64,000 nucleotides of DNA from Anthoceros angustus (lineage: Eukaryota > Plantae > Anthocerotophyta). The DNA is taken from assembly GCA_010909165.1 (NCBI GenBank), contig VJWM01000011.1:868001-932000 (forward strand). Direction: 5' to 3'. Both the position numbers and the translations under genes were made by a program. The notes under the pieces are model-generated. The model ran no database searches, was not told the DNA's origin, and was given only the letters and a program-made list of their open reading frames with translations. Below, piece after piece: positions 31,465 to 61,436 of this stretch. Numbering within the stretch: position 1 is the stretch's first letter; every line of letters starts with the position of its first letter.

Positions 31465-31973
31465 CGCCGGCTAAATTCCACAATTCAGAATTTACACTTC
31501 CACAATCGAGCAATCGAGCAATCGAGCACTCGAGCTCTGCGCTGCTTTGCCGTACTAGGCTGCGCGCACAGGAGCGGAGCGTAGTGCCAAATCCAGACTG
31601 CCCACAAAGAAAGACGAATAGTTCTACATGGAGCGTAGAGCACTGCAGCAGAGTGGAGCTCAAGTGTGACAAAACTTCCAGACCAGATTCCCTTTCCCAC
31701 GACAGCTGAGAGAAAGATACACTTCACGCTCCGACAGCATGATAGAGAGAGAGGGGATGGTACTGTACATACATTCATGACTACGCCGGCCACCCAGCAT
31801 GCGTTTGCCTGCCTGCCTGCCTCCTGCTCCACTAATTACGAGCAGCGTTATGTAGCGTAAAGTCAGTCATTAGGAGCGGGCCGTCATAAGCGCGGGAAAT
31901 TGAAACGGCACAGTCACATGGTTGCATCATGCATAGCTATCGTATCGCATGTATGTATGTGTTGTACAACATG

Positions 31974-38653: not shown

Positions 38654-39345
38654 TGCGTCCCTCTGCCTTCTACCACGTGCAGGTCTTGAGAAATGGATGG
38701 TGAGCAGTGTTCGAGGGTCCCTCATGATGCGTCCCTCTGCCCTCTACTACGTGCAGGTCTTGGGAAATGGATGGTGAGCATTGCTTCTGGGAAGCTACGT
38801 GCATCCACGCAAAGACAGCTCACCTTGAGAGCATCAGGTGGCACAGGAATATACCTGTTCTGTTGCACATAGCAGTCTTGGTGAGATGAAGAGCATTGCT
38901 TGACGTGGTGAAAAACGAGCCCAGCAAACAGTGTACGGATTCGGGCTGGACATCTCGCCTCCTCGAAACTATGGAATTCAGACACAGCTTGTCAGGAGTC
39001 GGTCTCATCCGATTCCTTTCATGAAAGGGCCATCTTCATGGACGAAAGAGAGAGAGTGCAGCGCTCCTGTAGTCCAAAATGTAGTCCGAAACCACTGGTG
39101 TCAGGCATGCCTCGTCGTGCAAAGTCTACAGTGGAGGCAGCTGCTTTATAACAAGTAGCTAGAGAGGCGCCTTTGCAGGCGTGCAGAAGTCGGGGGCGTG
39201 CAGCGCACGCCTCTCCGCGCCGCTGGCCAGCACTGGCCCAGCAGGAGTGGATTCGACTCTCTCTGGAGTGGGACGCCGTTGGTTCTGATTGCCTTCTTTT
39301 GCAAGTCCTCCAGACAGGGTGAGACGTTGTTGTGAAGGTTGGGCT

Positions 39346-42300
39346 ATGGCGGATCCATCTCTTCCTGCCGGCGCCGCGCCGGTGGACCTGCTCCAGAGCC
39401 TCGAGTCCCGCTCGCCGCACCTGCGTGCTTTGCTTGCAGACCTGGAGTCCCACTCGCGAAAGCCGTCGGAACTGCCGTCTGTCGATTCGTGGGGAAGCTA
39501 CTTCAATTGCGACTGCGAGGACGGGGAATGTCACCACCGCGAGGAATGGCACTGGGAGGTGCGCTTGCGTCTGCTCACAGCTATGGGCAGATGCCGGTCG
39601 CTCAGGACAATTCAACTGAATCCTCTGCGGAAGAGGGGTCACAGCGTGAGGCAGAACGAGGCGGTGGCGCTCTTATCAGGCTTGCAACACAACTTTGGGC
39701 TGAGGGAGCTGGATCTGTATGGCTACAAGGGTTTTGGGACGGCAGAAGCCTGCCTGACGGCACTGATTGCCGTCATCGACAGAACTTTTTCCTCACTGGA
39801 ATCCCTCGGTCTGCAATATGTGGGATTGAGTGTAGAAGGCCTGGGTGCCATCGCTGCAGCCCTTGGACGCAATGCCAGCTCATCAGTGCTGTCCAGCTTG
39901 TCTCTGTGTGGGAACGACATTGGGAATGCTGTCGGGGCGCAACACTTGGCCGACATCCTTACCAACTCGCCCAAGCTCCGCACACTCTCGATGAGCAACA
40001 TAGGGATGGACGAGGAAGGAGCCGTGGTGATTGCACAGGCCCTGGCGCATACCACACTGGCTGGGCTTAGAATCGGAGATCCTGCGCCCCGGAATCCAAA
40101 CCAGCGCGCGCCCATGTTCCTCGTTCCACTGCTCCATGCTTTGGTGTGGCACACCGTGGCGGATCCTCCAGCTGCTGTTTCTGGCAATCACTCCATCACA
40201 CGGCTTGACCTTGGGTGTCCGGGAGGCCAGGAGGCTGTGGAGCCGGGGCTGGGAGAAGCCCTGGCTCGGGTGCTTCGCACCAACCGGGCTCTGAAAGACC
40301 TCAAACTATCCAGCTTCTTCGTCACACGCGGATTGGGAGCTCTGCGGAAAACAGCAGCATCACCAAACTCCGGGTGATTCACTCGCCGCAGTCGGAGGAT
40401 GATGACATGGATCCCATGCTGACCACCATCCTGGATGAGTGCAAGATTGTTGAGCAGGTGCAGATCCAGTTTGACAAGCCCTTTGGTCCGTCCAGCTTCA
40501 CCAAGGCGTTTTTCCAAGGGTTCCTGCAGAAAAACCGCAGCATCAAGAGGCTGGTGTTGGATGGCTGGGATGGGCTGGACGAGGAGATGTTTGAAGACCT
40601 GATTCAATCCCTGTCCACCAACACCAACAGCTATCTCAGGCTGGATCACATCTCCATCAAGGGCACCTCATGGGAAAAGCAAGGCAGGGGCGAACGTCTG
40701 CAGAAGCGTTGAGATGCATTGCGAGTGCAGCCGGAGCTGGGTGCGTTGCTTGCAGACCTGGAGTCCCACTCGCCAGTGCTGCAGAAGCGTTGGGAGCTGC
40801 GTGCGTTGCTCGCAGACTTGGAGGACCCTGTTGAAGCTACTTCAATTGCGACTGCGAGGACGGGGAATGTCACCACCGCGAGGAATGGCACTGGGAGGTG
40901 CGCTTGCGTCTGCTCACAGCTATGGGCAGATGCCGGTCGCTGAGGAAGATTCGACTGAATCCTCCGGGAGATGGGTCACAGCGTGAGGCAGGACGAGGCG
41001 CTGGCGCTCTTATCAGGCTTGCAACACAACCTTGTGCTGGAGGAGCTGAATCTGTATGGCTACAAGGGTTTTGGGACGCCAGCAGCCTGCCTGCAGTTGA
41101 GTGCCATCATGGACAGAACTCATCCTCACTGGACTTGCTCGGTCTGCAACATCTGGGATTGAGTGCAGAAGGACTGGGTGCCATCGCTGCAGCCCTTGGA
41201 CGCAATGCCAGCTCATCAGTGCTGTCCAGATTGTCTCTGTGGGAACGACATTGGGAATGCTGTCGGGGCGCAACACTTGGCCGACATCCTTACCAACTCG
41301 CCCAAGCTCCGCATACTCTGGATGAGCAACATAGGGATGGACGAGGAAGGAGCCGTGGTGATTGCACAGGCCCTGGCGCATACCACCACACTGGCTGGGC
41401 TCAGAATCGGAGATCCTGCGCCCCGGAATCCAAACCAGCCGCGCCCATGTTCCTCGTTCCACTTGCTCCAAGCTTTGGTGTGGCACACCCTGGCGGATCC
41501 TCCAGCTGCTGTTTCTGGCAATCACTCCATCACACGGCTTGTCCTTGGGTGTCCGGGAGGCCAGGAGGCTGTGGAGCCGGGTCTGGGAGAAGCCCTGGCT
41601 CAGGTGCTTCGCACCAACCGGGCTCTGAAAGACCTCAAACTATCCAGCTTCTTCGTCACACGCGGATTGGGAGCTCTGCGGGAAAACAGCAGCATCACCG
41701 AACTCTGGGTGATTCACTCGCCCCAGTCGGAGGATGATGACATGGATCCCATCCTGACCACCATCCTGGATGAGAGCGAGACTGTTGTGAGGGTGTGGAT
41801 CCGATTTGACAAGCCCTTTGGTCCGTCCAGCTTCACCAAGGCGTTTTTCCAAGGGTTCCTGCAGAAAAACCGAAGCATCGAGAGGCTGGTGTTGAATGGC
41901 TGGGATGGGCTGGACGAGGAGATGTTTGAAGACCTGATTCAATCCCTGTCCACCAACACCAACACCCACCTCAGGCTGGATCACATCTCCATCAAGGGCA
42001 CCTCATGGGAAAAGCAAGGCAGGGGCGAACGTCTGAGAAAGCGTTGAGAGATGCATTGCGAGTGCAGCCGGAGCTGCGTGCGTTGCTCGCAGACTTGGAG
42101 TCCCACTCGCCAGTGCTGCACTATCTGTGGATTTGTGGGAAGCTACTTCAATTGCGACTGCCAGGACAGGGAATGTCACCACCGCGAGGAATGGCACTGG
42201 GAGGTGCGCTTGCGTCTGCTCACAGCTATCGGCAGATGCCGGTCGCTGAGGAAGATTCATCTGAATCCTCCGGAAGAGGGTCACAGCGTGAGGAGGACGA

Positions 42301-45300
42301 GGCGCTGGCGCTCTTATCAGGCTTGCAACACAACCTTGTGCTGGAGGAGCTGAATCTGTTTGGCTACAAGGGGTTTGGGACGGCAGCCTGCCTGCAGGCA
42401 CTGATTGCCGTCATCGACAGAACTCATCGCTCACTGGACTTCCTCGGTCTGCAATCTGTGGGATTGAGTGCAGAAGGACTGGGTGCCATCGCTGCAGCCC
42501 TTGGACGCAATGTCAGCTCTTCAGTGCTGTCCAGATTGTCTCTGTGTGGGAACGACATCGGAATGCTGTCGGGGCGCAACACTTGGCCGACATCCTTACC
42601 AAGTCGCCCAAGCTCCGCAATCTGGATGAGCAACATAGGCATGGACGAGGAAGGAGCCGTGGTGATTGCACAGGCCCTGGCGCATACCACTACACTGGCT
42701 GGGCTTAGAATCGGAGATCCTGCCCCGGAATCCAAACCAGCCCGCGCCCATGTTCCTCGTTCCATTGCTCCAAGCTTTGGTGTGGCACACCTGGCGGATC
42801 CTCCAGCTGCTGTTTCTGGCAATCACTCCATCACACGGCTTGTCCTTGAGTGTCCGGGAGGCCAGGAGGCTGTGGAGCCGGGCTGGGAGAAGCCCTGGCT
42901 CAGGTGCTTCGCACCAACCGGGCTCTGAAAGACCTCAGACTATCCAGCTTCTTCGTCACACGCGGATTGGGAGCTCTGCGAAAACAGCAGCATCACCAAA
43001 CTCCTGGTGTTTCACTCGCGGCAGTCGGAGGATGATGACATGGATCCCATCCTGACCACCATCCTGGATGAGTGCAAGACTGTTGAGGAGGTGCAGATCC
43101 GGTTTGACAAGCCCTTTGGTCCGTCCAGCTTCACCAAGGCGTTTTTCAAGGGTTGCTGCAGAAAACCGCAGCATCAACAGGCTGGTGTTGGATGGCTGGG
43201 ATGGGCTGGACGACGAGATGTTTGAAGACCTGATTCAATCCCTGTCCACCAACACCAACACCCACCTCAGGCTGGATCACATCTCCATCAAGGGCACCTC
43301 ATGGGAAAAGCAAGGCAGGGGCGAACGTCTGGAGAAAGCGTTGGGAGCTGCGCGAGTGCAGCCGCAGCTGCGTGCGTTGCTCGCAGACTTGGAGTCCGAG
43401 TCGCCAGTGCTGCAAGAACTCCCATCTGTGGATTTGTGGGAAGCTATTTCGATTGCCTTTGCCAGGAGGCCTACAGGGAGTGTCAACACCGGGGCAGTGG
43501 CAGTGGTACGTACGCCTGCGCCTGCTCACAGCTATCGGCAAATGCCGGTCGCTGAGGAAGATTCATCTGAATCCTCCGGGAGGAGGGGCACAGCGTGAGG
43601 GAGGTAGAGGCGCTGGCGCTCTGCTATCAGGCTTGCAACACAACCTTGTGCTGGAGGAGCTGAATCTGTATGGCTACAAGGGGTTTGGGACGGCAGCCTG
43701 CCTGCAGGCACTGAGTGCCGTCATCGACAGAACTATCTCACTGGACTTGCTCGGTCTGCAATCTGTGGGATTGAGTGCAGAAGGACTGGGTGCCATCGCT
43801 GCAGCCCTTGGACGCAATGCCAGCTCAGTGCTGTCCAGATTGTCTCTGTGTGGGAACGACATCGGAATGCTGTCGGGCGCAACACTTGGCCGACATCCTT
43901 ACCAACTCGCCCAAGCTCCGCAATCTGGATGAGCAACATAGGCATGGACGAGGAAGGAGCCGTGGTGATTGCACAGGCCCTGGCGCATACCACTACACTG
44001 GCTGGGCTTAGAATCGGAGATCCTGCGCCCCGGAATCCAAACCAGCCCGCGCCCATGTTCCTCGTTCCATTGCTCCAAGCTTTGGTGTGGCACACCCTGG
44101 CGGATCCTCCAGCTGCTGTTTCTGGCAATCACTCCATCACACGGCTTGTCCTTGAGTGTCCGGGAGGCCAGGAGGCTGTGGAGCCAGGGCTGGGAGAAGC
44201 CCTGGCTCAGGTGCTTCGCACCAACCGGGCTCTGAAAGACCTCACACTATCCAGCTTCTTCGTCACACGCGGATTGGGAGCTCTGCGGGAAAACAGCAGC
44301 ATCACCAAACTCCTGGTGTTCCACTCGCGGCAGTCGGAGGATGATGACATGGATCCCATGCTGACCACCATCCTGGATGAGTGCAAGACTGTTGAGGAGG
44401 TGCAGATCCGGTTTGACAAGCCCTTTGGTCCGTCCAGCTTCACCAAGGCGTTTTTCAAGGGTTGCTGCAGAAAACCGCAGCATCAACAGGCTGGTGTTGG
44501 ATGGCTGGGATGGGCTGGACGACGAGATGTTTGAAGACCTGATTCAATCCCTGTCCACCAACACCAACACCCACCTCAGGCTGGATCACATCTCCATCAA
44601 GGGCACCTCATGGGAAAAGCAAGGCAGGGGCGAACGTCTGGAGAGAGCGTTGTTAGCTGCGCGGCTGCAGCCGGAGCTGGCTGCCTTGCTTGCAGACTGG
44701 GAGTTGGGTGCGTTGCTCGCAGACTTGGAGTCCGAGTCGCCAGTGCTGCAAGAACTCCCATCTGTGGATTTGTGGGAAGCTATTTCGATTGCCTTTGCCA
44801 GGAGGCCTACAGGAGTGTCAACACCGGGGCAGTGGCAGTGGTACGTACGCCTGCGCCTGCTCACAGCTATCGGCAAATGCCGGTCGCTGAGGAAGATTCA
44901 TCTGAATCCTCCGGGAGGATGGGCACTTACAGCGTGAGGGAGGTAGAGGCGCTGGTGCTGCTATCAGGCTTGCAACACAACTCTGTGCTGGAGGAGCTGG
45001 GGCTGTTTGGCTACGTGGGCTTTGGGACGGCACGCTGCCTGCAGGCACTGACTGGCGTCGTGGAGAGAGCTTATGTCTCATTGGACTTGCTGGATCTGCG
45101 ATATCTGGGATTGAGTGCAGAAGGACTGGGTGTCATCGCTGCAGCCCTTGGACGCAACGGCAGCTCAGTGCTGTCCAGATTGCGTCTTTGTGGGAACGAC
45201 ATCAGGAATGCTGTCGGGCGCAACATTTGGCCGACATCCTGAGGAATTCGATCGCCCTCCGCAATCTCTGGATGAGCAATATTGGCATGGATGAGGAAGG

Positions 45301-48300
45301 AGCCGTGCTGATTGCAGAGGCCCTGGCGAATACCACCACCCTGATCCGAGCTTAGAATCGGAGATCCTGTGTTCATTGGTCCAATTCTCGAAGCTTTGGT
45401 GTGGCACACCTGGTGGATCCTCCAGCTGCTGTTTCTGGCAATCACTCCATCACAGGCTTGTTCTTGAGTGCCCAGGAGGCCAGCAGGCCGTGGAGCCAGG
45501 ACTGGGAGAAGCCCTGGCTCAGGTGCTGCGCACCAACCGTGCTCTCACTGACCTCAGACTTGCCAGCTTCTTCGTCACACGCGGATTGGAAGCGCTACCT
45601 GAAAACAGCAGCATCACCCAACTCCAAGTAAGTCACACGCGGAATTCGGAGGATGATGACATGGATCCTATGCTGATCACGATTCTTCAGGAGTGCAAGA
45701 ATGTCCAGCAGCTGCAGCTTCAGTTTATAAGCCCTTTGGTCCATCCAACTTCTCCAAGGCGTTTTTCCAAGGGTTGCGGGATAATCGTAGCATCAAGACG
45801 CTTGTGTTGGATGACTGCGAAGGATTGGATGACTACATGTTCCAGAACTTGATGCGGTCTCTGGGACGCAACTGCAACAACGTCCTGGAGAACATTTCCA
45901 TCAAGAAAACAACCTGGGAAAGCGAAGGCAAAGGAATATACATCCAGAATGCTCTCTCAAGGAACATGCGCAGAAGAAGCGCTGCTCCGCATGGTAGGTG
46001 CCCCAAGCCAGTAGCTAGCTACCCTTGTCCTGATTTGTATCTACAGTCAGAACCCACAAACTCAGATGTATACTGACCCCTTCTCACTTGTGCAGGTTCG
46101 GAAGAAGTGCCACCACCGGTCACGGCAACTGTGGCAACCTCTGATGCCGCAGCAGGTAATGAAACTACATGAATCCATGGATTTGATCCAACCACTTCCA
46201 AGCTGTTGTTGTTGTTGCAACTAGTTTGAATGCCTGTACCGAATGCACCACTTGATGCTGCTGCTGGCAGGCAGTCTGATGATTGACTGATTGGCTGTCT
46301 TTGTTTTCACCACAATTTCCAGTTGCTGTTCCTGAGGAGCTCAGTACCCTGCTTGCCGACCTCGACTCACCTTCGCCACACTCAGTAGTCTTCCTCGTGT
46401 GAAGCGTTTGGGCACTTGTTCAAGAGGGACGTGGAACATCCAAAGGTGGAACTTGAACTGCGCATGCGCCTTATGAAGGCTATCGGAAATGCCCCACACT
46501 CAGATTCATAGATCTCGACCCTCTTGGGCGTCGAAATTACAGGGTGACGGTGGCAGAGGCGATGGCGCTGCTGGAAGGCCTGAGCTCGAATGCAATAGTG
46601 GAACGGCTGGACTTGAGTGGCTTCCTTGGTTTTGGAACAGGTGAAGTCTGCGCTGCAATCGCCGCTATCTTGCAATCCAGCCGCACCTTGCAATTTCTGA
46701 ATATGGGATACACTGGCATGACTGTCGAAGGACTGGCTTGCATGCGAAATAATAGCAGCACTGTGCTTCGCACCTTGAACCTTTCTGGAAACACGACTGT
46801 TGGAGAAGGTGTAGGAGCTCAACACCTGGCTAATATCCTGACCAGCACTCCCGCGCTTCGCCACCTGGGGATGTGGGATATAGGGATGGATGAGGCGGGA
46901 GCATTGATGATAGGGGATGCTCTGGCACAGAACACCACACTTGACAGGCTGGACATAGGATTTAATCAAGCGTCAAGGCCAAACCAGGCAGGGATGATGG
47001 CCACGCTGTTAGTTCGAGCATTCCTCCCTACCAAATTTCTTTCTGGTAACAAGTCTGTCACACATCTCGGGCTGAAAGTATGGGAAGCAGGACAGCCTGT
47101 CATCCCTGAATTGCGAGAAGCTGTGGCCGCACGCTTCATGGGAACCATACTTGGAGGCATCTCGATGTATGTACCTGCTTTATAAGGCAGGGATTGGAGG
47201 GCTGTGTGACAACAGCAGCGTTATCCGTGTGACAGTCCGACATGGTAGCTCTAGTGCTGAGGAACAAGGGATGTGCAATCCTGCAGACAGTGGAAAAGTT
47301 TACAATTAGCTCAGAACAGTTTGGGACCTTTGGGATCATCCGACCTCCCAAGACGTTTTCAAATCGTTGCAGGACAATCGTTACCTCAACAGGTTGGTGT
47401 TGGATGGCTGGAAAGGGTTGGACGACAATATGTTCCAAGACCTGTTGCGGGCTCTGCAAGTGAACACCAATTTGAAGAGTATATCGTTCGAGAACACTGT
47501 GTGGAAAAGTCAGGAAAAGGAGCTGCAGTGGATGAACTACTACGCCAAAACAGGGAATACCGGAAAGCTCTGGCAGGGGCTCCAACAATGCCAGTGAAAT
47601 CATGTCGCCTCGTACTTTGTGGATTTCCATATGCAGGTGAGCACATGCTGAACCCAAAGTTTGTACATCCCAAATGGCGTAGTTTGTCAGACTTCACTGC
47701 AGTTGTTTCTGTCTTCTCACATCTGTTTTCTTGTCTTTATTGCCGTTGTTTTCGTCTCCGAGTGTAATCGGTGGTAAATGTTGCTGTTTCAGGAAAACCA
47801 CGATACGGAATACGTTGATGAGTATGCAAACACACGAAAACGATGTTGAGATGGAGGGTGAAACGATTTCGAAGCACATACCTCGAACCCTTGGGTTTGA
47901 GGTTGAGGTGATAAAAGATGGTCCAGCCTTGAGAATTACCGTTTGGGATCTTGCAGGGCACCAGGAGTTTCATGCTCTTCACGATTTCGTCTTTCCTGCT
48001 GTGAATAACTCTTCTCTCTTCTTGTTTGTCTATAACCCGTTCAAATTTGGTGGTAATTATTCAAGTGCGGAAATGAAGGATAGAAAGGATTTTCGAGATG
48101 AATTTATTTATTGGCTTAAATTTATTGCTTCCAACTCGCGGTTAGCTCAACAGGTGAAACCTTATGTTCATGTGGTGGTAACATTTGGTGACAAGCTTGA
48201 AGGTAGGATGTCTTCTTGAAATCTGAGGAAGTGTTGGTGATGAAGAAAAGTTCATGGCTGTTGTGGAAACATCCAATGAACCCACTTTCATCAATGGACA

Positions 48301-51300
48301 AAGTTGGAAAGATGTGTGTATACGCAGCCTTATAGAGGAAAAGCTACAACAACGTATTAGCATTGGCCCCAATTCCCAATATTTGTGAGCAGACCCGTAC
48401 ATGTACAAAGATGGGCTGAGGATCAACAAGGTATGCCAATCATTTCTGAGAAGTTTAGTGAGTTGTTTTAGCACATGTAAGGTGGCAGCATCCACTCATC
48501 TCGGAGGATTATGAAGATTTCTTAGAGACTTCATGGACAAAAGAGGATAGCTGGAAAGTAGTAGCATCATATCTCAAGGATTCAGGGGAGATCATATATT
48601 TTCAGATGTCGGAACTGATGGTCATCAATCTCCAATGGCTAGGAATGGGAGTTTTGGTCAGCTGATTAGTATATTTGGTGAACGGACAATAGCAGATTGG
48701 CTTCAAGTTCAAAATGGGTTTATCAGCAAATATGGGTTGAGTAGCCTTCTAAAATGTCTTTGAACAAGGTAGGGCTTGATGAAACCATTGTGAGCGAGGA
48801 AAAATTCATCCAACTGATGTGTGAGTTGCACCTTTGCATGAAAGTGGAGATGAGGAAGGAGAAGTGCGTTATTTTGTTCCAATATGTATGTATAAAGAAG
48901 AAGATTTATTAGGAGTTGATCAGCTTAGTATGGCCTTCACACGGTGGTAATCTTCATGATTATATCTTTATGGGTTTGCGTCTACAATGTGATGATCAAG
49001 ATTGTACATTCCTCACACCAGGATTTTTCCCTAGGTTACAGGTTGTAACTTTTCTCAAGTTGAATATCTTTTGTTTTATGTCCTGAAACTTCTTCTTTGT
49101 TTTATTATTATTAACTAGTCTCATTGTTCCTATATATTGTAGGTACTTTTATACACATATTGTTTGAAAATGAAGTGGGTTGATGAGGATAGACGAGGTG
49201 ATTCAGGAATAAAACTACAGCCTAATGTCCTTTTAATATCTGCAGAGGCAATGGATATCTTTGTGGAATTTAATGCCAAAGTGGGTTGTTACATAGATAT
49301 ATTGGCCCGATCTACTCAAGGCTATTTAGAGTCCATGTCATTTTGAAGGAACATATTGTATCTCGATTCGGGCATTTTGTGCTTCGCATGAGGGTTGTGC
49401 AGGGGTCACACTAGTTGAAGGTGTTCTTCGACATGAATGTGTAGCGTCCCTCACTCTATGCAGATACAGGAGATACGAGTGTATCCTGACGAACGAGCTA
49501 GTTGAAAGGGTGGCTGCTGCAAAAGATCAACGTCGTGCACACTCCACGCAATCTTGGAAGCCTGTTAGCGACAGCAACACCCTGGGCGATCCAATCATTT
49601 TAAAGGCCAACCATGAGTATGCAACGGTGGTGGATGGCCATGTCATTTTGGGACGAAAAGAGGACCTTGCCAAAGCCGAAGCAGAGTTCCAAGGTTTGAA
49701 GCTCTCAATTCTGTGGATAGTTTGTGTTGCAGTAGGTGTCCTTCTTCTCTTCACAAGTAGTTTCTAAGTAGCTTTGCACAAGTAGGCCGTTTCTTGCATA
49801 CTCTAAGGCTATACCTGTTGCAGGATTGAAATCCAGTAGTAGTTGCTTTGGTGGAACTCCTACACAGCTATCCCCGCAAGTAGGGAAGCTTGTGCGAAAG
49901 AGCAACTTGTTGAGTAGCCTTCTAAAATGTCTTTGAACAAGGTAGGGCTTGATGAAACCAATGTGAGCGAGGAAAAATTCATCCAATTAATGTGTGAGTT
50001 GCACCTTTGCTATGAAAGTGGAGATGTGGACGGAAAAACTCAATATTTTGTTCCAATAAGTATGTATAAAGAAGAAGATTTATTAGGAGTTGATCAACAG
50101 TTAGTATGGCCTTCACAGAGTCTGGATCATGATTATATCTTTATGGGTTTGCGTTTACAATGTGATGATCAAGATTGTACATTCCTCACACCAGGATTTT
50201 TTCCTAGGTTACAGGTTCGTAACTTTTCTAAAGTTGAATATCTTTTGTTTTATGTCCCTGAAAACTTATTCTTTAGTTTTTATCATTATTAACTACTGAC
50301 TAGTCTCATTGTTCCTATATATTGTAGGTTTTTTATACAAATATTGTTTGAAAATGAAGTGGGTTGATGAGGATAGACGAGGTGATTCAGGAATAAAACT
50401 ACAGCCTAATGTCCTTTTAATATCTGCAGAGGCAATGGATATCTTTGTGGAATTTAATGCCAAAGTGGGTTGTTACATAGATATATTGGCCCGATCTACT
50501 CAAGGCTATTTAGAGTCATGTCATTTTGAAGGAACATATTGTATCTCGATTCGGGCATTTTGTGCTTCGTATGAGGGTTGTGCAGGTCACATTGGTTGAA
50601 GGTGTTCTTCGACATGAATGTGGCATCCCTCACTCTATGCGACATAGGAGACACGAGTGTATCGACATAAGCTAGTTGAAAGCGGTGGCTGCAAAGGATC
50701 CGTCTGCACACTCCACGCAATCTTGGAGCGCACTGGGCGATCACTATTTTAAAGGCCAACCGAGAGTATGCAACGGTGGTGGATGGCCGCGTCATTTTGG
50801 GACAAAAAGAGGACCTTGCCAAAGCCGAAGCAGAGTTCCAAGGTTTGAAGCTCTCAATTCTGTGGATAGTTTGTGTTGCACTAGGTGTCCTTCTTCTCTT
50901 CACAAGTAGTTTCTAAGTAGCTTTGCACAAGTAGGCCGTTTCTTGCATACTCTAAGGCTATACCTGTTGCAGGATTGAAATCCAGTAGTAGTTGCTTTGG
51001 TGGAACTCCTACACAGCTATCCCCGCAAGTAGGGAAGCTTGTGCGAAAGAGCAACTTGATTTGAGTAGTTATCCTAACTCTAGCAGTATGGAAGAAGGTA
51101 ATCGAAGAGGTTTGGCAGTGGTTGTGAGTGCGGAAGAGGACAGACCGGGAGGATCTGTAGACAGAGGGCGACTTGATTTTCTTTTCAACACATTGGGCTT
51201 TCATACTGATTTTTAGTGGACAGTTCTGACAGTGTCAAAGCACACATGAGGAAAGTTGCCGATCTCTCTGCCCTTGAAAAGGACGATTGCTTTGTGTGTT

Positions 51301-51848
51301 GCATCAATGCTCATGGGGGGATTGAAGAAAATGGCAGAGACTACATTGAAATTGGAAAACCACCCCGGGAGAAGCTATATGTTTACGATGACATCGTGAA
51401 GCCCATTTGTGAATCCAAGTGGTTGAAAGACAAGCCTAAGGTGTTTCTGATCAATGCTTGTCGAGCCATCCAAAGTGGGAAAGCTAAGGACTCTGAAGTC
51501 GAGGGTAGCCAAATTGTGAGTGAGAGAGCCGGAGAAGATCTACGCCTGCTTTCTGAGAAGGATTGTCTCACCTTCTTCTCGACCAGTCATGGACAACAAT
51601 CGTTCAGAGATGTCAACAATGGCTCAAACTTTATCATAGCTTTGATGGAAGCCATCATTCAGGGGTCGGAAAGAAAGGATGATATGTTCAGCATTTTAAC
51701 ATCAGTGATTGCCAAGGTCACGGAGATGCCATGTTGGCTCCGAAATCAAGAAGGGTCCTATGAGAAGATACCCCAGTGTCCGGTGTTTTCCTCCACACTC
51801 ACGAGAAAGCTTTGGTGGTGGCCTCGGTGTGGCCATGTTCCTTCATAA
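39346..51848 (+). CDS. Giant TORNADO1-like ROCO protein: (LRR module)x6 - Roc GTPase - COR (duplicated) - caspase (peptidase C14A-like); frameshifted in this assembly
   Basis: ATG at 39346 (MADPSLPAG), then RI-like LRR modules. The Roc has P-loop CGFPYAG|KTT across intron 47637-47792, G2 RTLG, G3 WDLAGHQEFHALHD and YWLKFIASNS...VVVTFGDK. The COR has GLRLQCDDQDCTFLTPGFFPRLQV, a TRN1-like motif. The C-terminus is a caspase. All parts are on one strand and colinear. A continuous frame requires correcting many 1-2 nt indels. Confidence 0.75.
39420..45970 (+). repeat. Five tandem ~1.3-kb coding repeats (each ~430 aa of ribonuclease-inhibitor-like LRRs)
   Basis: Units start at about 39420, 40740, 42075, 43370 and 44705. 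Each runs LRALLADLES...VRLRLLTA.G.CRSLR.I.LN...GAQHLADIL...GMDEEGAVVIAQAL...EDDDMDP...ISIKGTSWE. A diverged sixth unit lies at about 46330-47560. Confidence 0.95.
47590..48300 (+). other. Roc (Ras of complex proteins) GTPase domain
   Basis: GxxxxGKT split by an intron (GFPYAG/KTT), RTxG switch I, WDLAG G3, and a TFGDK G4-like motif. Confidence 0.88.
48737..51068 (+). repeat. ~1.17-kb tandem duplication of the COR-coding region
   Basis: 48737-49910 matches 49911-51068. TTGAGTAG occurs at both ends and the junction. The copies differ by real substitutions (GDEEGEVRYF vs GDVDGKTQYF). Confidence 0.93.
51061..51848 (+). other. Caspase (CASc, p20+p10) catalytic domain
   Basis: RGLAVVV...DRPGGSVDRGRLDFLFNTLGF; DCFVCCINAHG (His codon 51312); LKDKPKVFLINACRA (Cys codon 51459); DCLTFFSTSHGQQSFRDVNNGSNFIIAL; ILTSV; PQCPVFSSTLTRKLWW. 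One -1 indel lies in a T-run at about 51210. Confidence 0.92.
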
Positions 51849-52435
51849 TAACCGGATTGTAATAGAATCATCGTTCCCAGCAAGACACTGTTGGTGCAGC
51901 GAATTGCTTCTAATATGGTCTTCTCATTTGTCCTTTTCTGTTCATTTCTTATTTAGGTTCGCACACAATTTGGATGATAAACGACTCCTTCTGTGGATGA
52001 ACCTGTAGGTGAGAGCTCATGGACTGTAAGGAGGAAAGAATGAGGGAGTTGTGGAGCTGTAGTTTAAGAAAGCAAGTCCAGATTTAAGCGTTCCTCTTAT
52101 CGAATGACTTCTAGTCCTTTTGCATACAAGATGTGTGTTCCATCTTCCTGAGCAGTCCATGCATGAACAGGATGTCCCTCACTTAAATCGCGTCTGAGGC
52201 TTGCCATCCTGTCCCTCACTTAAATCACGTCCGAGGCTTGCCTTTCTTTCACGAGGACAAAAGACAGAGCGCGGACAGTAGGTCATATGGTGCCAAACCA
52301 TCGTCTCCGGTGTTAGGGCTATGGAATTTTCGCTGTTGAAATCTGGATTAGGTTACTTTTCATGCATCACCGACAACACGAACTTGTTTGTAAGGTAGTG
52401 CTGTCCTTCCGGTTGTGCTGACGTCATCCATCATC

Positions 52436-54005
52436 TGCATGTATGCTGCCTGCGGGAGGTTGGAGGATGCGTTGCAGGTTTTTAATGGATTGGCTGCTCC
52501 CAATTCTTATTCGTGGTCCTCCATAACGGAAGCAGATGTTGGCAATGTACAGGCCAGGCAGGCAATCGAGATCTATTTGAGGATGCGACAGTCATCCCCT
52601 ATGCTGGCAGATAATCATCTGTTTGTGGCAACACTTAAGGCTTGAGCCAGTGCAGAAGATCTGACATCAAGGAGACAGGTCCATGTCGATGTCCTGAATA
52701 GTGTGCTTGAGCCTGATGTATTTGTCAGGAGCTGCCTGGAGGAAATGTATGCAAGATGTGGGAGGTTGGATGATGCTCGCACGATCTTTGACAAGTTGGA
52801 CTGGAGAATGTGGTCACATGGAATACGCTGCTTGGAGGGTATGCAGGGTGGGCGTGGGCAAGAAGCCCTTGCGCTCTATGCAAGTATGCAAGAGGAGGGA
52901 ATCACTCTACCTGACCCTGTCACGTTTTTGTGCCTCCTCAAAGCATGTGGTAGCAGTGGAACACAACACCAGGGAGTGCAGCTTCATTCACAAATACAGG
53001 AAGCAGGTCTCGGATCTGAGGTGATGGTGGGAAGCTGCCTCGTAGATATGTATGCAAGATGTGGAAGCTTGGATGATGCCCGGACTGCCTTTGACAACAT
53101 GACCAGAAGAAATGTGGTGACCTGGAACGTGATGCTCGCAGCATATGCTGATCGTGGGCTAGGTGAAGAAGCCCTGTCTCTTTATGCAACAATGCAACAA
53201 GAGGACGTTACTTCAGCAGATGACATAACTTTTGTGTGCATTCTGAAAGCATGTAAAAGCATCGGGCCATTGGAGCAGGGAAGGCAGCTACATGACAAGT
53301 TTCAGGAGATGGGGCTGCAAGTTGACGTGGTCATTTCGAGCTGCCTGGTGGACATATATGCAAACTGTGGAAGCTTAGAGGATGCCCGCAGGGTGTTTGA
53401 CGAGTCAGCCACAAGAGATGGCAGTGTATGGTCAGCACGGGATGGGTCAGGAAGCTCTCATGTGCTACGACAAAATGGTGGTGGTAGGCATCTGGTGTGG
53501 GAAGGTTTGCAGTACTTCAAATCCATGAACAGATATCACGGGATAGCTCCCAGAGCTGAGCACTATGTCTGTATGATAGATCTCCTGGGACGTGCTGGAC
53601 GCTTCAAAGTGGTAGAAGAGCTCTTGTCAAGTATGCCGATGCAGCCTACTCTTTCCTTTCCATGTTGATGTCTCTGCTGGGCTTCCTGCAGGAAGCACAG
53701 TAATGTATCTCTCGCGGAGAACAAGTCTTCGATCTGGCGGTGCGTCTGCAGCCCACAAATGCCGCAGCATACATGTTGATGTCATAGATGTACGCTGATG
53801 CGGGCCTTCCAGAGGACGCCCATAGGGTGGACAAGCGCAGGAAGACGGAAAGTGCTGCGTGGAAAGAGCCAGGCTGGAGCTGGATAGCGCATCCCGAGAA
53901 AGTGTATGACATGTTAGCCGAGGTAACCTGTAAGCTTAAGGAGGCAGCACAGGCAAAGCAGAGCGTGTGCTCGGTATCCTCATCTCTGTCCGAGGGTCCC
54001 TCATG
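52436..54005 (+). pseudogene. Second copy of the PLS-class PPR (E-type) gene, with stops and deletions
   Basis: Paralogous to 36760-38650. Motifs include MVGSCLVDMYARCGSLDDARTAFDNMTRRNVVTWNVML, PRAEHYVCMIDLLGRAG and KEPGWSWI. In-frame TAA and TAG stops occur in the E domain. Confidence 0.85.
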
Positions 54006-54019
54006 ATGCGTCCCTCTGC

Positions 54020-56107
54020 CCTCTACTACGTGCAGGTCTTGGGAAATGGATGGTGAGCATTGCTTCTGGGAGGCTACGTGCATCCACGCAAAGACAGCTC
54101 ACCTTGAGAGCATCAGGTGGCACAGGAATATACCTGTTCTGTTGCACATAGCAGTCTTGGTGAGATGAAAGAGCATTGCTTGACGTGGTGAAAAACGAGC
54201 CCAGCAAACAGTGTACGGATTCGGGCTGGACATCTCGCCTCCTTGAAACTATGGAATTCAGAGACAGCTTGTCAGGAGTCGGTCTCATCCGGTTCCTTTC
54301 ATGGACGAAAGAGAGAGATTGCAGTGGCACTCCTGAGGCTGAAAGCCACTCACAAGGCAGCCGACGAAGCACAGAAAAATGTAGTCCGAAACCACTGATG
54401 TCAGGAATGCCTTGTCGTGCAAAGTCTACAGTGTACACAGGTGTGTAACAAGTGGCTAGAGAGGCGGCTTCGCAGGCGTGCAGAAGTTGCTCCACTGCAC
54501 GCTTCTCCGCGCCGCTGGCCAGCACTGGGCCAGCAGGTGTGGATTCGAGTCTCTCTGGAGTGGGATGTTGTGGGTTCTGCTTGGCTTCTTTTGCAAGTCC
54601 TCCTGACAAGGTGGGACGTTGTTGTGAAGGTTGGGCTATGGCGGATCCATCTCTTCCTGCCGGCGCCGCGCCGGTGGACCTGTTGCAGAGCCTCGAGTCC
54701 CGCTCGCCGCAGCTGCGTGCTTTGCTTGCAGACCTGGAGTCCTCCTGCCGTCTGTCGATTCGTGGGAAGCTACTTCAATTGTGACTGCGAGGACGGGGAA
54801 TGTCACCACCGCGAGGAATGGCACTGGGAGGTGCGCTTGCGTCTGCTCACAGCTATGGGCAGATGCGGGTCGGTCAGGAGGATTCGACTGAATCCTCTGC
54901 GGAAGAGGGTCACAGCGTGAGGCAGGACGAGGCGGTGGCGCTCTTATCAGGCTTGCAACACAACCTTGGGCTGAGGGAGCTGGATCTGTTTGGCTACAAG
55001 GGTTTTGGGACGGCAGCAGCCTGCCTGCAGTTGAGTGCCATCATGGACAGAACTCATCCCCCTCTACTACGTGCAGGTCTTGGGAAATGGATGGTGAGCA
55101 TTGCTTCTGGGAGGCTACGTGCATCCACGCAAAGACAGCTCACCTTGAGAGCATCAGGTGGCACAGGAATATACCTGTTCTGTTGCACATAGCAGTCTTG
55201 GTGAGATGAAAGAGCATTGCTTGACGTGGTGAAAAACGAGCCCAGCAAACAGTGTACGGATTCGGGCTGGACATCTCGCCTCCTTGAAACTATGGAATTC
55301 AGAGACAGCTTGTCAGGAGTCGGTCTCATCCGGTTCCTTTCATGGACGAAAGAGAGATTGCAGTGGCACTCCTGAGGCTGAAAGCCACTCACAAGGCAGC
55401 CGACGAAGCACAGAAAAATGTAGTCCGAAACCACTGATGTCAGGAATGCCTTGTCGTGCAAAGTCTACAGTGTACACAGGTGTGTAACAAGTGGCTAGAG
55501 GCGGCTTCGCAGGCGTGCAGAAGTTGCTCCACTGCACGCTTCTCCGCGCCGCTGGCCAGCACTGGGCCAGCAGGTGTGGATTCGAGTCTCTGGAGTGGGA
55601 TGTTGTGGGTTCTGCTTGGCTTCTTTTGCAAGTCCTCCTGACAAGGTGGGACGTTGTTGTGAAGGTTGGGCTATGGCGGATCCATCTCTTCCTGCCGGCG
55701 CCGCGCCGGTGGACCTGTTGCAGAGCCTCGAGTCCCGCTCGCCGCAGCTGCGTGCTTTGCTTGCAGACCTGGAGTCCTCCTGCCGTCTGTCGATTCGTGG
55801 GGAAGCTACTTCAATTGTGACTGCGAGGACGGGGAATGTCACCACCGCGAGGAATGGCACTGGGAGGTGCGCTTGCGTCTGCTCACAGCTATGGGCAGAT
55901 GCGGGTCGGTCAGGAGGATTCGACTGAATCCTCTGCGGAAGAGGGGTCACAGCGTGAGGCAGGACGAGGCGGTGGCGCTCTTATCAGGCTTGCAACACAA
56001 CCTTGGGCTGAGGGAGCTGGATCTGTTTGGCTACAAGGGTTTTGGGACGGCAGCAGCCTGCCTGCAGTTGAGTGCCATCATGGACAGAACTCATCCCCCA
56101 CTCTACT
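54020..56107. repeat. ~1.04-kb direct tandem duplication (upstream region plus first part of LRR gene)
   Basis: 54020-55060 matches 55061-56107. CTCTACT occurs at both ends and the junction. Confidence 0.93.
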
Positions 56108-56600
56108 CCCTCGGTCTGCAATATGTGGAATTGAGTGCAGAAGGCCTGGGTACCATCGCTGCAGCCCTTGGACGCAATGTCATCTTATCAGAGTCTGGAA
56201 GCCACAGTGGGCTGTCCGCATTGTCTCTGTGTGGGAAGGACATCGGGAATGTTGTCGGGGCGCAACACTTGGCCGACATCCTTACCAACTCGCCCAACCT
56301 CCGCAGACTCTCAATGAGCAACATAGGTATGGACGAGGAAGGAGCCGTGGTGATTGCACAGGCCCTGGCGCATACCACCACACTGGCCGAGCTCACAATC
56401 GGAGATCCTGCGCCCTGGAATCCAATGTGGCCACGTGGAGTACGCTGCTTGCAGATTAATGCTCAGGGCGGCCGTGGGCAAGAAGCCCTTGCCCTCCATG
56501 CTAGGATGCAAGAGGAGGGAATCCGTCTGCCTGGTCAGCCATGTCATGTTTGTGTGCCTCCTAAACGCATAGAGCCCTACACCAGGGGCGGCAGCTTCAT
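54638..56600 (+). pseudogene. Truncated paralogues of the ROCO LRR N-terminus (starts at 54638 and 55673); the second is fused to a PPR fragment
   Basis: Identical MADPSLPAGAAPVDLLQSLESRSP start. LRR homology stops at about 56424, where PPR-derived sequence (NVATWSTLLA / QGGRGQEALALHARMQEEGI) begins. Confidence 0.85.
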
Positions 56601-58099
56601 TCACAAATTTATGAAGCAGGAGTGGGATGAAAGAGCGGATTCTCGACAAAGCAGGTGCTTGACTCCGATGTGAGATGAAAGAGCGGAAGATGCGTCACGT
56701 TTCTGAATCCAGTTCGCAGTGTTCAGTACGGATAGGATGGATAACACGAATTCCTGACCAGACATCTCCTTGCAAGAATGTATCCTTTCCTGGAAGGCCC
56801 AGTCATCCACGAGACATAGTTGGTAGTGGAGCTGTCCTCCCAAGTCCGAACCCCTTGCTCCACTCACAAGATGCTGCATGCCTCCGGTTGTCTGTTGACA
56901 GGAATCTTCTTGACTATACTGCGGGCTTGGTGGTGAGAGATTGAAAGAGCGGTGCTTGACAGACTCGGCAAAGAGATGAACTCTTCAAGTTCTGATCCCG
57001 GTTCAGAGTGTACTGTACGGATTGGGTGAACAATATGGAATTCGGACAACACCTGGCAGCGATTCATCCCTTGATGGAAGACCGGTTGCCACCAGAGACA
57101 TCGTAGTGGAGCCCTCCTCCGAAGTTGAACCCCTTTCTCCACTCACGAGATTCTGCAGGCCTCGTACTGTATGTATGTAACCTGCACACGTAGTGAGATG
57201 TTGACTTGAATGAATTACGAGGACTGGTTGTGAAAGTGTATTTTTGAAGCTTTTGGCTGCAGATTTGAGGTGCTTAGGCAGGGAGGTACATGGGAGGGAA
57301 ATTTGAATGGTCAGCCTGAGTCAAAGCCTACAGAACGACTCTCTGCTTCTTTCCCAGTAGAGGAGGCACTACATCAATTTCCATATTTGCTGCTGTCCCA
57401 GCCATAATTCTCATAGCAAATTTGTCGTTGAACGGTTCAAGTGTGGAAGCGTCTCTTCTCATAGCCCTGCACTAAGCATATCAGGCTTTAAACTCTGCCA
57501 AGCAGACGTCCAATACGAATTGCAAATGTTCATTACATATACCTACCAGAACAGATCGGCGGGGCCGATAAACATGTATTGCTTCATCCTTCATCCGGGT
57601 GTGCGCAGGGCCGCAGGCTGCATCCGATTTATTTGCGAAGCATCTCCAGGGCTGGTAGGCTGGTTGGAGCGCATCCAAATCTGGTTGGACCAGAGCCCGG
57701 TCCTCATTTCCTTTATCAGCGCCACCACATACTGCGACAATAAGCTCACCATTGTGGTGCTGCTGTGGAAATGCGCAGAGGAAACAAATGATGTTTGATG
57801 CCTTTGCTCTTCATTGAAATGTAACCAGCGTACCTAAGGCTCGCTATACACGTATGTACACCTAGTCTACTTCAAAGTGATAAAGTGATTGCTGCCGGCA
57901 GTTCAGCGTGTGCAAGCACTGATTGCTTTCTGAAGATCGCAGGCCCTGTAAGGAATGGAAGCCGGCTTTTGGGACGGATGGACAGGGTGGACAATATCGA
58001 AATCAGACAACACCTCGCAGGGGTTCGTCCTTCCCTGGAAGGCCCCGCCGTCCACAAGAGACATAGTAGGCCGGGGAGCCCTCCTCCGAAATCCCCAGC

Positions 58100-59470
58100 T
58101 TGGATAAGCTAGATGTGCAGGGAGTTGAGGTGAGCGTGGAAGGCCTGGCTCATATCTCCGCAGCCTTGCGAGACAACAACAGTGGCTCATTTCTCCGCAA
58201 GTTGTGCCTCGATCGCACCTACATAGAGAATGCTGCAGGGGCGGGGCACGTAGCCGGCATCCTCACCCACTCGCCTGTGCTGCGAACCTTGGGGTTGTCC
58301 GGGATAGGAATGGATGATGCGAGCGCCGCGGTGATTGCCAACGCTGTGGCCCGCAGCACCACACTAACAAGGCTCGCCATCGGGTATGACCGGCATGCGC
58401 AGGAGAACCTTGAGCAGGCAGCCAGGTTGATTCCTCTCTTGACAGCCTCCTCCAGCTCGGACGCGGAGCCCAGACTATTCAACCAATCCATCACCAATCT
58501 CTGGCTCTGGCTCTAGCTCGAGGTAACCGGGGTGCCAGGAGGAGGCAAGGATAGCGCTGCGGAGGCTGTGCTCGCGGAAGCCATGGCTGTAATGCTTTGC
58601 TCCAACACCACTTTGAAGGTTCTGAATATACATATCCAGCTTTCTTGTGACCCTCGGCTTGTCCGCACTGCCTCACATCAGCAGCATCCTTGGCACTTCA
58701 ATTGCACCACCACCATTCCCTGGATGAGGAGGAGCTGGATCCTGCGCTGCTGCAAATCCTGCACAGGTGCGCGAACCTGGATATGCTGGGACTCCAGTTC
58801 ATGAAACCCTACGGGAGCAAGTCCATCAAGGAGCTGTTCACGCACAACAACCCTAGCATCGAGGTGCTGGCGTTGGATGGTTGGGATGGCCTGGACGACC
58901 ACATGTTGGAGGACCTAGTTCGATCTCTTTCCACCACCTCTCCGGCGTTGGCACTCTTATCGAGCTTGCAACACAACCCTGTGCTGCAGCAGCTGGGTTG
59001 GAGTGGCTACATGGGCTTTGCGACGACACCAGCTTGCGTGCAGGCACTGTCGGCCGCCATCCACAAATCTTCTCTCTCATTAGTGTACCTGCGTTTTCAG
59101 GGTGTGGGATTGTGTGCACAAGGGCTGGGTGACATCGTTCCACCCCTTGGACGCAACGGCACCGTAGTCCTGTGCAAATTTGCTCTAGATCCGAGTGGGA
59201 ACGATCACGCCGGATCACAATCGTCCTCCGGATCCTGCATTCCATCGCTCAATCACACAGCTTTTTCTTGAGTGTCCGGGAGGCCAGCAGGCCGTGGAGC
59301 CGGGGTTGGGAGAAGCCCTGGCTCGCGTGCTTCGATCCAACCGTGCTCTGGATCAGCTCTCAATTGACAGATTCTTCGTCACGCGGATTGTGGGAACTGG
59401 CTTTGTGCAGCTGAAGCTTCTTCAGGATGACACTTACCTGTACCTGGAATCGTTTGTGCTGAATTTTACA
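58100..59470 (+). pseudogene. Diverged, internally deleted LRR modules of the same TRN1-like family
   Basis: VEGLAHISAALRDN...GAGHVAGILTHSPVLRTLGLSGIGMDD, LALDGWDGLDDHMLEDLVRSLST and ECPGGQQAVEPGLGEALARVLRSNRAL. No Roc or COR follows. Confidence 0.8.
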
Positions 59471-59639
59471 ACCTGTTGTCAGAGCTTGATCGAGGTTGAA
59501 GGCCGAGATCAATCACCTCGAAGGAAGAGCGAAACCCTGACACGATCCCAGCGTGCTCCGAGAGCGAGAGCAAGTTGCGGAACTGTGTAAAGCATGATTG
59601 TGGCCAATACCACAGAACTCGGTTAGCACCCTGGCGCCA

Positions 59640-61436
59640 CCAGCCGGTAAGGGTAATGTGCTTGATGAAAGTTTTTGGTGCTGTCCGCTGACGCTTCTTG
59701 TCCTTCGTGTTCGACGATGGACGAGAAGCTAATTCCCAAAACTGGATTATGGTGGCTTTGACATGCGGCGAAAGAATGTCAGATCTTGGTTTCCTCCCGG
59801 CACCCAACCAAGTTTTCTCACTTGGAATATGCGCTTCCTGCCTTGTGCCCAGGGCTCGATGGATCTGCTTCCTACTCACATTGGTCAGGGCTCGATGGAT
59901 CTGCTTCCTACTCACACCAATGTGCCGCGAAAGCGTTGAAACCAGGTGGTTGCCTTGGATATCCTCTACCAAGATGACGTTAAATAGGGTGTTCCTCGCT
60001 CGCAGATGGTCGCCAACTTGAACTGCCTTCATGCTTGTGCAAGCCTCACGCACATTGTTCAGCAACAATGCTCCCAACTGGTGCTCTTTTGCTTTCTTTG
60101 CAGCTGCTGGCTGGTACATCTTCAGCAATGGAACGCAGCTGAACATCTCCAGAATGTCTTTCCGGCACTGGCCTGTATATGAACTTGTAAGGTCAAGGAA
60201 TTGGTGGGCTAAGTTGCGACCCACATCCTGCTTCCGACGCACAGAGCATTCTCGAATATCAAAATTTGCAGCAAGAGCCCGCTGACGCTCTCTATGCCTC
60301 TGCACTCTGACACTTGACGTCTTCACACCTGCATTTTGTGGCATGACTGGAGCGGCAGGTACACCTGCCCTCTGTTCATTTTGTGCTGCTTGAGGCTCCT
60401 CCACTGATCTCTGCTCCTGTGGCATTTGCAGATGGATTGCTACTCTCCTCCCTTGGGACTCCAGAGAACTTGCTTCAGTGCGAGCTGCTTCTGTTTGTAG
60501 GGCAAGTGCTTGCCGTTCTCGCTGACGCCGTTTATTCGCGGCCCAACGACTGGGATGATGGTGACCGAGCCATATGAACCTTCAAAACCACTGAAACCTC
60601 CACATACGGTAACAAGGTCAGGTCGCCCCAAATAAAGAGCAGCAAAAAGAACAGCCCTTTACCGGCACTCACAGATACAGTGTGGAAGTACCGGGCTCCC
60701 AACACTGCTAGCAGCACATGCAGCCCACGTCCGGCTGGAATCCTCCTGCGCTCTCAATTGACCTCACCACTGCAACGCCTGCACACAAAAAAGCAACCAC
60801 ACCATCATTTGACTACCAGTGCAGGCTGCAGCCTAGGAGTAGGACCAGCCCAGCGCCAGACTGGCAGAAGCATTAGCGGCAGCAATGGAAGGCACTATGC
60901 AAACCCTCACTCTGTGCTCTATCCTCGAGAGAAAAGAAGCCCTTGAATGCGGTGCCTATCTCATATGCCTCGAATGCCTATTTTGCTGGATGTTGGGCTC
61001 CTCACTTTCGTGGCATCACGAACCAAGTCCACTTCGTCAAGGCAGGCGGTGTGCCGCGAGAATTTGGATCATTGAATTAAACGGTGCTGACCCCGTTACC
61101 CATGTTAAAAGTCCAAAAAAACTGTTTTGAACTTGAGCGCGGGCAAGCCGGTTCCCCAAGTTCATAAAACCAGCGTGACAAATGGTTGCTTAGTGAAACA
61201 ATGCCCGTCCCCAAAAGTTACCAAATTCATAACTTAATTTCTTAATATTTTAATGATTATTTTAAATCTAAAATTTAACCTTAGATGAAAATAATCTATT
61301 TCTGTAACCTGTAAAAAAATCATATAGTATGGACAAGAAATAAATTAGGTAAATTATTAACGTGATGTGATGACAAAATAACAACGTTTCAGCCGTTTCT
61401 CACTAATGTGTGCACCAAACTGTGCTTGCACCCGTA
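59640..61436 (-). mobile_element. Truncated putative DNA transposon (N-terminal transposase-like ORF; possible terminus at 61436)
   Basis: ORF 59466-60425 has an HTH-like LSRHIGVSRKQIHRAL and RKPRSDILS...IIQFWELASRPSSNTKD, a pattern recalled from uncharacterised eukaryotic DNA transposases. The minus-strand end reads TATA-CGGGTGCAAGC. The superfamily cannot be determined. Confidence 0.5.

What the first reader, a model, noticed from the sequence alone, without database searches (positions are those of the whole stretch)
51061..51848. Animal-type (Asp-pocket) caspase domain in a plant genome
Seen: the full caspase motif series RGLAVVV; DR.G...D...L..LF..LGF; DCFVCCINAHG; KPKVFLINACRA; D.L...ST..G..SFRD...GS.FI..L; ILT.V; Q.P...STLTRKL. 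The catalytic His (51312) and Cys (51459) are intact. Arg residues sit at the positions of caspase-1 Arg179 (51142) and Arg341 (51606), and QACRG appears as NACRA. The p20-p10 linker contains candidate self-cleavage Asp sites (KAKD/S, AGED/L). Established: plants are held to have only Arg/Lys-specific metacaspases (DxCHSG-type motif, acidic S1 pocket) and no true caspases. Inference: a predicted Asp-specific caspase, from horizontal transfer or a retained ancient lineage.
Basis: partly seen in the sequence, partly recalled or inferred. Interest (0 to 1): 0.95.

Follow-up and report, generated by a model that had tools for sequence, protein, structure and literature searches.

The report
Bryophyte caspase ending a Roco gene
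A plant gene for a repeat sensor with a GTPase switch ends in a protein-cutting domain of the animal caspase type, which plants are said to lack; this copy reads as broken, but intact relatives exist in liverworts and a hornwort.

Summary
The domain is real and caspase-type: Pfam Peptidase_C14 E=1.6e-23, best solved matches caspase-8/-6/-7/-3, with His, Cys, Arg179 and Arg341 at the stated positions. It is neither an animal contaminant nor a metacaspase. It groups (100/100) with a divergent clade that includes Marchantia polymorpha, M. paleacea, Riccia fluitans and the hornwort Nothoceros. An intact relative's model ranks caspases (Z 27) above MALT1 (22) and metacaspases (19 or less). Here it is the probable last exon of an LRR-Roc-COR gene, and a second plant dataset has the same order and two shared intron positions. 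In relatives it sits with alpha/beta-hydrolases or before NB-ARC-LRR. Likely mechanism (inferred): Roc-COR dimerisation activates an Asp-cutting protease in immunity or cell death. Activity, splicing and reads are untested. No bacterial or viral donor and no paper were found; UniRef already labels the liverwort proteins 'Caspase family p20'. This scan found the family before on other DNA of this genome.

The parts
39289..47540 (+). Tandem ~1.3-kb LRR modules (ribonuclease-inhibitor-like), many frame breaks as assembled; probable sensor region of the same gene
   Evidence: Repeat families with 1.30-1.34 kb spacing; LRR_6 hit in 46544-47182
47592..48219 (+). Roc GTPase; P-loop GFPYAG-KT split by a GT-AG intron at 47637-47792
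   Evidence: PF08477 E=9e-6; Atlas features Roc; intron ends
48736..49917 (+). First copy of a 1149-bp tandem duplication of the COR exons
   Evidence: 92% identical to the second copy over 1200 columns
49909..50842 (+). COR exons, second copy (intron 50215-50327); frame breaks as assembled
   Evidence: tblastn matches to the COR regions of L006, L007, P0011; L007 region has a weak COR-A hit; intron ends
50843..51016 (+). Candidate GT-AG intron (174 nt) whose removal keeps COR and the caspase exon in one frame; not tested on RNA
51017..51213 (+). Linker and N-terminal part of the caspase domain (first strand, Arg179 equivalent at 51142, first helix)
   Evidence: 51043-51201 matches P0011 residues 167-222 at 46%
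51210..51214 (+). Run of five T where the reading frame shifts by one base
51216..51848 (+). Main caspase ORF, 210 codons without a stop: His 51312, Cys 51459 (NACRA), Arg341 equivalent 51606, p10 to the stop codon

Best explanation
This is a native plant member of an undescribed bryophyte clade of true-caspase-type (C14A) domains, encoded as the last exon of an LRR-Roc-COR (TORNADO1-like) gene. Shown: caspase fold and pocket residues, the plant clade, gene order, shared introns. Inferred: in a working copy the LRR array senses a ligand, Roc-COR dimerises, and this brings two caspase domains together, as with animal initiator caspases. They then cut a substrate after Asp to trigger defence or cell death. 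The family is a mobile output domain of bryophyte immune receptors, since relatives also sit before NB-ARC-LRR or after alpha/beta-hydrolases. This copy is broken as assembled; whether the breaks are real is open. Confidence: about 0.9 for the native clade, 0.75 for the fusion, 0.5 for the mechanism.
For: Pfam and PDB matches. Tree: window domain plus 11 plant-like rows against 20 animal-type rows, 100/100; SH-aLRT 91 and 94 in larger quick trees. Named members: Marchantia polymorpha Mp6g00900/Mp6g00860 on a 28-Mb sequence, M. paleacea, Riccia fluitans on a 56-Mb sequence, Nothoceros transcripts. Model of intact relative P0011 (pLDDT 84): caspase-9/-8/-3 Z 27, MALT1 22.1, AtMC4 19.3, Yca1 15.6. 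Arg179 in 13/18 rows (3 gaps), Arg341 in 14/18, Cys in 16/18. P0011 and P0014 carry COR and caspase in one ORF behind Roc-COR sequence, with introns at the same two places as the window. Caspase ORFs with splice donors ahead of hydrolase/NB-ARC-LRR in L002 and L026. COR-mediated dimerisation of Roco proteins: PMC4104024.
Against: Frameshift inside the domain and many breaks upstream. The COR-caspase join rests on a predicted intron; no RNA was examined. Gln283 is Asn in 15/18 rows, and several members lack His or Cys (P0014, P0016, P0025, second caspase of L002), so part of the family is inactive. Identity to the nearest relatives is only 33-41%. No activity data and no substrate in the window. 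The L006 P-loop lacks the Lys.
Confidence: 0.62

Rival explanations
1. This particular copy is a real pseudogene in a decaying tandem array; only paralogues and relatives work.
For: Frameshift in the domain; 27 indels between the two COR copies and 12-19 between LRR modules; flanking PPR genes also broken; the ANTH ORF (471 aa) in the same window is unbroken, so errors are not uniform.
Against: Near-identical copies differ by almost as many indels as substitutions (27:40, 12:14), which suggests consensus errors rather than neutral decay (inference). The caspase break is a single base in a T-run. The 210-codon ORF has no stop and keeps every catalytic and pocket residue.
Confidence: 0.45
2. The caspase is a stand-alone small gene (Met at 51088) next to, but not fused with, the Roco gene, and is activated in trans.
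For: An ATG lies just before the first strand; in-frame stops separate COR from the caspase unless the intron is removed; P0008 and P0122 look stand-alone.
Against: Similarity to the COR-caspase ORFs P0011 and P0014 starts 45 bases upstream of that ATG; a GT-AG intron restores the frame exactly.
Confidence: 0.15
3. The clade has the caspase fold but is not an Asp-specific protease: altered specificity, or a scaffold or decoy like cFLIP.
For: Gln283 replaced by Asn; Gly after the catalytic motif replaced in this copy; repeated loss of His/Cys in relatives; no conserved linker Asp.
Against: Both pocket arginines and the dyad are kept together across liverwort, hornwort and unnamed members at about 30% identity. 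Asn at this site also occurs in 13 of 135 animal-type rows.
Confidence: 0.22
4. Contaminating animal DNA joined into the assembly, or a recent transfer from an animal.
For: The top phmmer hit is a mussel caspase; no reads could be examined.
Against: The domain groups with bryophyte proteins at 100/100, not with animals. Relatives lie on chromosome-scale liverwort sequences. GC 0.47 and GC3 0.51 match neighbours. A PPR gene starts under 1 kb downstream. Intron positions are shared with an independent dataset.
Confidence: 0.02

Closest known systems
Animal caspases (clan CD, family C14A; caspase-8, -9, -3, -6, -7)
   Same: Single-chain p20/p10 fold (Z 27, rmsd 1.9-2.7 A for a relative's model), His-Gly and Cys motifs, Arg179 and Arg341 pocket residues, KPK motif before the catalytic Cys.
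   Different: Separate plant clade; NACR instead of QACR; no CARD or DED; no conserved linker Asp; joined to Roc-COR, hydrolase or NB-ARC-LRR; activity untested.
Liverwort proteins auto-named 'Caspase family p20 domain-containing protein' (Marchantia polymorpha MARPO_0108s0037, Mp6g00900, Mp6g00860; Riccia fluitans R1flu_002472)
   Same: Same clade, same dyad and pocket residues.
   Different: C-terminal to alpha/beta-hydrolase domains in Marchantia rather than LRR-Roc-COR; database labels only, no paper names these genes.
TORNADO1-type plant Roco proteins
   Same: N-terminal ribonuclease-inhibitor-like LRRs followed by Roc-COR (PMC4104024).
   Different: Amplified 1.3-kb LRR modules and a C-terminal caspase. 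Orthology to TORNADO1 rests on my recollection of its sequence and was not tested.
Brown algal group 3 ROCO proteins with a C-terminal peptidase (PMC11378527)
   Same: LRR-Roc-COR followed by a protease; proposed immune receptors.
   Different: Their peptidase is IPR009003 (trypsin-like clan by my knowledge), not a caspase.
Metacaspases and the paracaspase MALT1
   Same: Caspase-hemoglobinase fold and His-Cys dyad.
   Different: Lower structural scores (Z 22 or less) and identity (10-19% against 24-30%); acidic S1 pocket and Arg/Lys specificity (established knowledge), whereas this clade has two Arg.
Reticulomyxa caspase-like proteins (PMC5982838)
   Same: A published case of caspase-type sequences outside animals, argued to be ancient.
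   Different: Rhizarian; relation to the bryophyte clade not tested here.

Membership tests
Caspases (C14A) | Caspase p20/p10 domain by profile | tested here: met
   PF00656 E=1.6e-23; clade profile against caspase-6 E=4e-33 over 241 positions
Caspases (C14A) | His-Gly and catalytic Cys dyad | tested here: met
   51312 and 51459
Caspases (C14A) | S1 pocket Arg179 and Arg341 | tested here: met
   Both present and conserved in the clade; Arg179 lies before the frameshift in this copy
Caspases (C14A) | S1 pocket Gln283 (QACxG motif) | tested here: not met
   Asn in the window and 15/18 clade rows; NACRA. Also Asn in 13/135 animal-type rows, so the departure is tolerated elsewhere
Caspases (C14A) | Fold closer to caspases than to MALT1 or metacaspases | tested here: met
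   Model of relative P0011: Z 27 against 22 and 19; the window copy itself was not modelled
Caspases (C14A) | Cleavage after Asp; dimer activation; processing into p20 and p10 | not testable with these tools
   Needs an assay; linker Asp not conserved
Caspases (C14A) | Nested within animal caspases (orthology) | tested here: inconclusive
   Separate from 20 animal-type rows at 100/100, but the tree is unrooted and has no MALT1, metacaspase or protist outgroup
Metacaspases (C14B) | Acidic S1 pocket, DxCHSG-type motif | tested here: not met
   NACR motif and two pocket Arg; no metacaspase among the best 60 PDB matches shown
Paracaspases (MALT1) | Acidic S1 pocket, Ig/death domains, closest fold | tested here: not met
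   Pocket Arg residues; 16% identity and lower Z; no Ig or death domain seen
Roco proteins | Roc domain followed by COR | tested here: met
   PF08477 E=9e-6, just under the curated cut-off; COR by similarity to L006/L007; frames broken as assembled
Roco proteins | Caspase in the same transcript as Roc-COR | tested here: inconclusive
   In-frame candidate intron and fused ORFs in relatives; no RNA examined
TORNADO1 family | Orthology to Arabidopsis TRN1 | not tested
   Only the domain order was compared

The most novel reading that the evidence does not exclude
Bryophytes have an old clade of active Asp-specific caspases used as the output domain of several immune-receptor types (Roco, NLR, hydrolase fusions). 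The Roco-caspase acts as a one-gene inflammasome and may cleave the gasdermin-like proteins that other scan notes place on this chromosome.
Probability: 0.35. Interest if true: 0.95.

Novelty: new variant of a known kind. Interest (0 to 1): 0.78.

Why it matters
A June 2026 review still calls it an established fact that plants have no true caspase orthologues (PMC13272413). A caspase-type clade with the Asp-pocket arginines in liverworts and a hornwort would overturn that for non-seed plants. It bears on whether caspases predate animals (PMC5982838) and adds an output domain to plant immune receptors that a survey of NLR N-termini does not mention (PMC11218826). It is directly testable because Marchantia polymorpha, a genetic model, has intact members (Mp6g00900, Mp6g00860). 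This locus itself is a poor experimental entry point because it is broken as assembled.

Tried and rejected
The search for homologous proteins with the window ORF was blank and with the clade profile gave only four proteins; the word index and length limits explain this. No relative in GTDB genomes, IMG/VR, plasmids or phages; the first two are pattern-limited. The JGI metagenome scan gave only 23-39% matches; the three of them included in the tree fell among the animal-type rows. A 59-nt GT-AG stretch at 51158-51216 could hide the frameshift as an intron; rejected because it would remove the first helix, which matches relatives. No gasdermin or other Pfam family except an F-box in 47 other window ORFs. 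I sent the caspase ORF to one more protein search and then used relatives' ids for all later caspase searches. One search of earlier findings failed. Ten paper searches found no description of the clade or the fusion; subscription journals are mostly not covered. The host species was not identified.

Full report
Observation. The motifs are at the stated places, and the four named codons read Arg, His, Cys and Arg. The 210-codon ORF 51216-51848 matches Pfam Peptidase_C14 at E=1.6e-23, and its best solved relatives are caspase-8, -6, -7 and -3. The domain is not in one frame: the first strand, Arg179 and first helix end at a stop at 51214-51216, and the frame shifts by one base at a run of five T, 51210-51214.

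What kind of domain. A phmmer search of 1.84 billion representatives gave 578 hits at E<=0.001; the best 150 mix animal caspases with a distinct set sharing an NACR motif and a C-terminal Trp. In a 147-row tree the window domain fell in a 16-row group apart from 127 animal-type caspases (SH-aLRT 91). A careful 32-row tree separated the window plus 11 such rows from 20 animal-type rows at 100/100. For the trees I joined the two pieces locally with X at the break. The 'animal' label was checked by name for only four proteins and otherwise rests on sequence type, and the trees are unrooted. Named members of the window's group are Marchantia polymorpha (MARPO_0108s0037; Mp6g00900 and Mp6g00860 on a 28-Mb sequence), M. 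paleacea, Riccia fluitans (56-Mb sequence) and the hornwort Nothoceros aenigmaticus. UniRef names the M. polymorpha and Riccia proteins 'Caspase family p20 domain-containing protein', so databases hold the domain under an automatic label.

Caspase, paracaspase or metacaspase. Among 18 clade rows Arg179 is kept in 13 (3 gaps), His in 12, Cys in 16 and Arg341 in 14, while Gln283 is Asn in 15. The clade profile matches caspase-6 at E=4e-33 over its whole length. An AlphaFold model of the intact relative P0011 (pLDDT 83.8) aligns to caspase-9, -8 and -3 at Z 27, to MALT1 at 22.1, Arabidopsis metacaspase 4 at 19.3 and yeast Yca1 at 15.6. The model was built from an alignment of clade members only, without templates. 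The domain is therefore caspase-type. Asp specificity follows from the two arginines by established caspase structure but is not shown. The proposed self-cleavage sites are not conserved.

Gene context. Upstream on the same strand lie 1.3-kb tandem LRR modules from 39.3 to 47.5 kb, a Roc domain whose P-loop is split by an intron at 47637-47792, and COR exons duplicated at 1149 bp. Removing a GT-AG intron at 50843-51016 keeps COR and the caspase exon in frame. I did not build or search a spliced model; the pieces were searched apart. An independent dataset, run SRR33208241, has LRR, Roc-COR and a single ORF that runs from COR into an intact caspase (L006, P0011). It matches the window in the COR, linker and caspase regions and has introns at the same two places, in the P-loop and after the RLQ motif. 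The closest relative of the window's ANTH gene (62%) comes from the adjacent run SRR33208242, which suggests a related plant. A PPR gene follows within 1 kb, and GC and GC3 are like the neighbours'. The host is a land plant, probably a bryophyte; I could not name it.

Other architectures. In Marchantia the caspase follows alpha/beta-hydrolase domains. In L002 and L026 caspase ORFs precede NB-ARC-LRR ORFs, with or without a hydrolase-like ORF between; splice-donor-like sites sit right after the domain in L026 and in the first L002 copy. L001 also has NB-ARC and LRR pieces downstream. Hydrolase-NLRs are a known non-seed-plant class, and the survey that describes them mentions caspase only for animal CARDs (PMC11218826). 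The domain thus recurs where immune receptors carry their output domain (inference).

Broken or mis-assembled. Near-identical repeat copies in this array differ by nearly as many indels as substitutions: 27 to 40 for COR, 12 to 14 and 19 to 66 for LRR modules. That suggests consensus errors, but the ANTH ORF is unbroken and real decay of a tandem array is also plausible. An earlier scan note (s1-285826) says RNA reads another copy intact; I could not test it.

Mechanism. Roco proteins dimerise through COR (PMC4104024), and initiator caspases are activated by induced proximity (established knowledge). The most likely working model is LRR sensing, Roc-COR dimerisation, caspase activation and cleavage after Asp, leading to defence or cell death. 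The domain identity, clade and order are shown; the splice is predicted; activation, specificity and role are inferred. Other scan notes place gasdermin-like genes 87-130 kb upstream. I found none in this window and did not test those claims.

Origin. No relative with the clade motif was found in GTDB, IMG/VR, plasmids or phages. Presence in liverworts and a hornwort at about 30% mutual identity rules out a recent animal source. Two members from JGI sample 3300060284, one at the base of the group in the quick tree, come from an unidentified eukaryote. Ancient transfer and ancient retention (as argued for Reticulomyxa in PMC5982838) cannot be told apart here.

Verdict. A real caspase-type domain of an undescribed bryophyte clade, here at the end of a Roco gene and broken as assembled. 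A 2026 review says plants have none (PMC13272413), and ten searches found no paper on it. New variant of a known kind; interest 0.78.

Noticed in passing
L002:1855-12643 and L026:591-6749: Tandem caspase-(hydrolase)-NB-ARC-LRR genes in plant-like contigs: a possible undescribed NLR class with an N-terminal caspase; the second L002 caspase has lost the catalytic His and both pocket Arg.
   Followed up: partly
L008:10001-13642 (Marchantia MARPO_0108s0037; Mp6g00860, Mp6g00900): Hydrolase-hydrolase-caspase genes with intact dyad and pocket in a genetic model plant; no paper names them.
   Followed up: partly
L001 and L024 (JGI 3300060284): Two clade members from one unidentified eukaryote with about 50% GC, near NB-ARC/LRR or ATPase/TPR pieces and a tyrosine-recombinase retrotransposon-like element; identifying the host could date the clade.
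   Followed up: no
window 39289-47540: About six 1.3-kb LRR modules in tandem, with partial copies again at 54000-59600.
   Followed up: partly
window 36600-39450 and 52270-54750: A PPR gene plus the start of an LRR module is duplicated about 15.3-15.7 kb apart, bracketing the Roco-caspase gene like a segmental repeat unit.
   Followed up: no
window 54019-56064: A second local tandem duplication of about 1040 bp, like the 1149-bp COR duplication; may be assembly artefacts.
   Followed up: no
window 24189-25787: Two identical 118-codon ORFs 1242 bp apart on the minus strand, inside a multi-exon gene (about 20000-31500) without Pfam hits.
   Followed up: no
window 59466-60581: Minus-strand ORF of 320-370 codons with no Pfam hit; looks transposon-derived by eye.
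   Followed up: no
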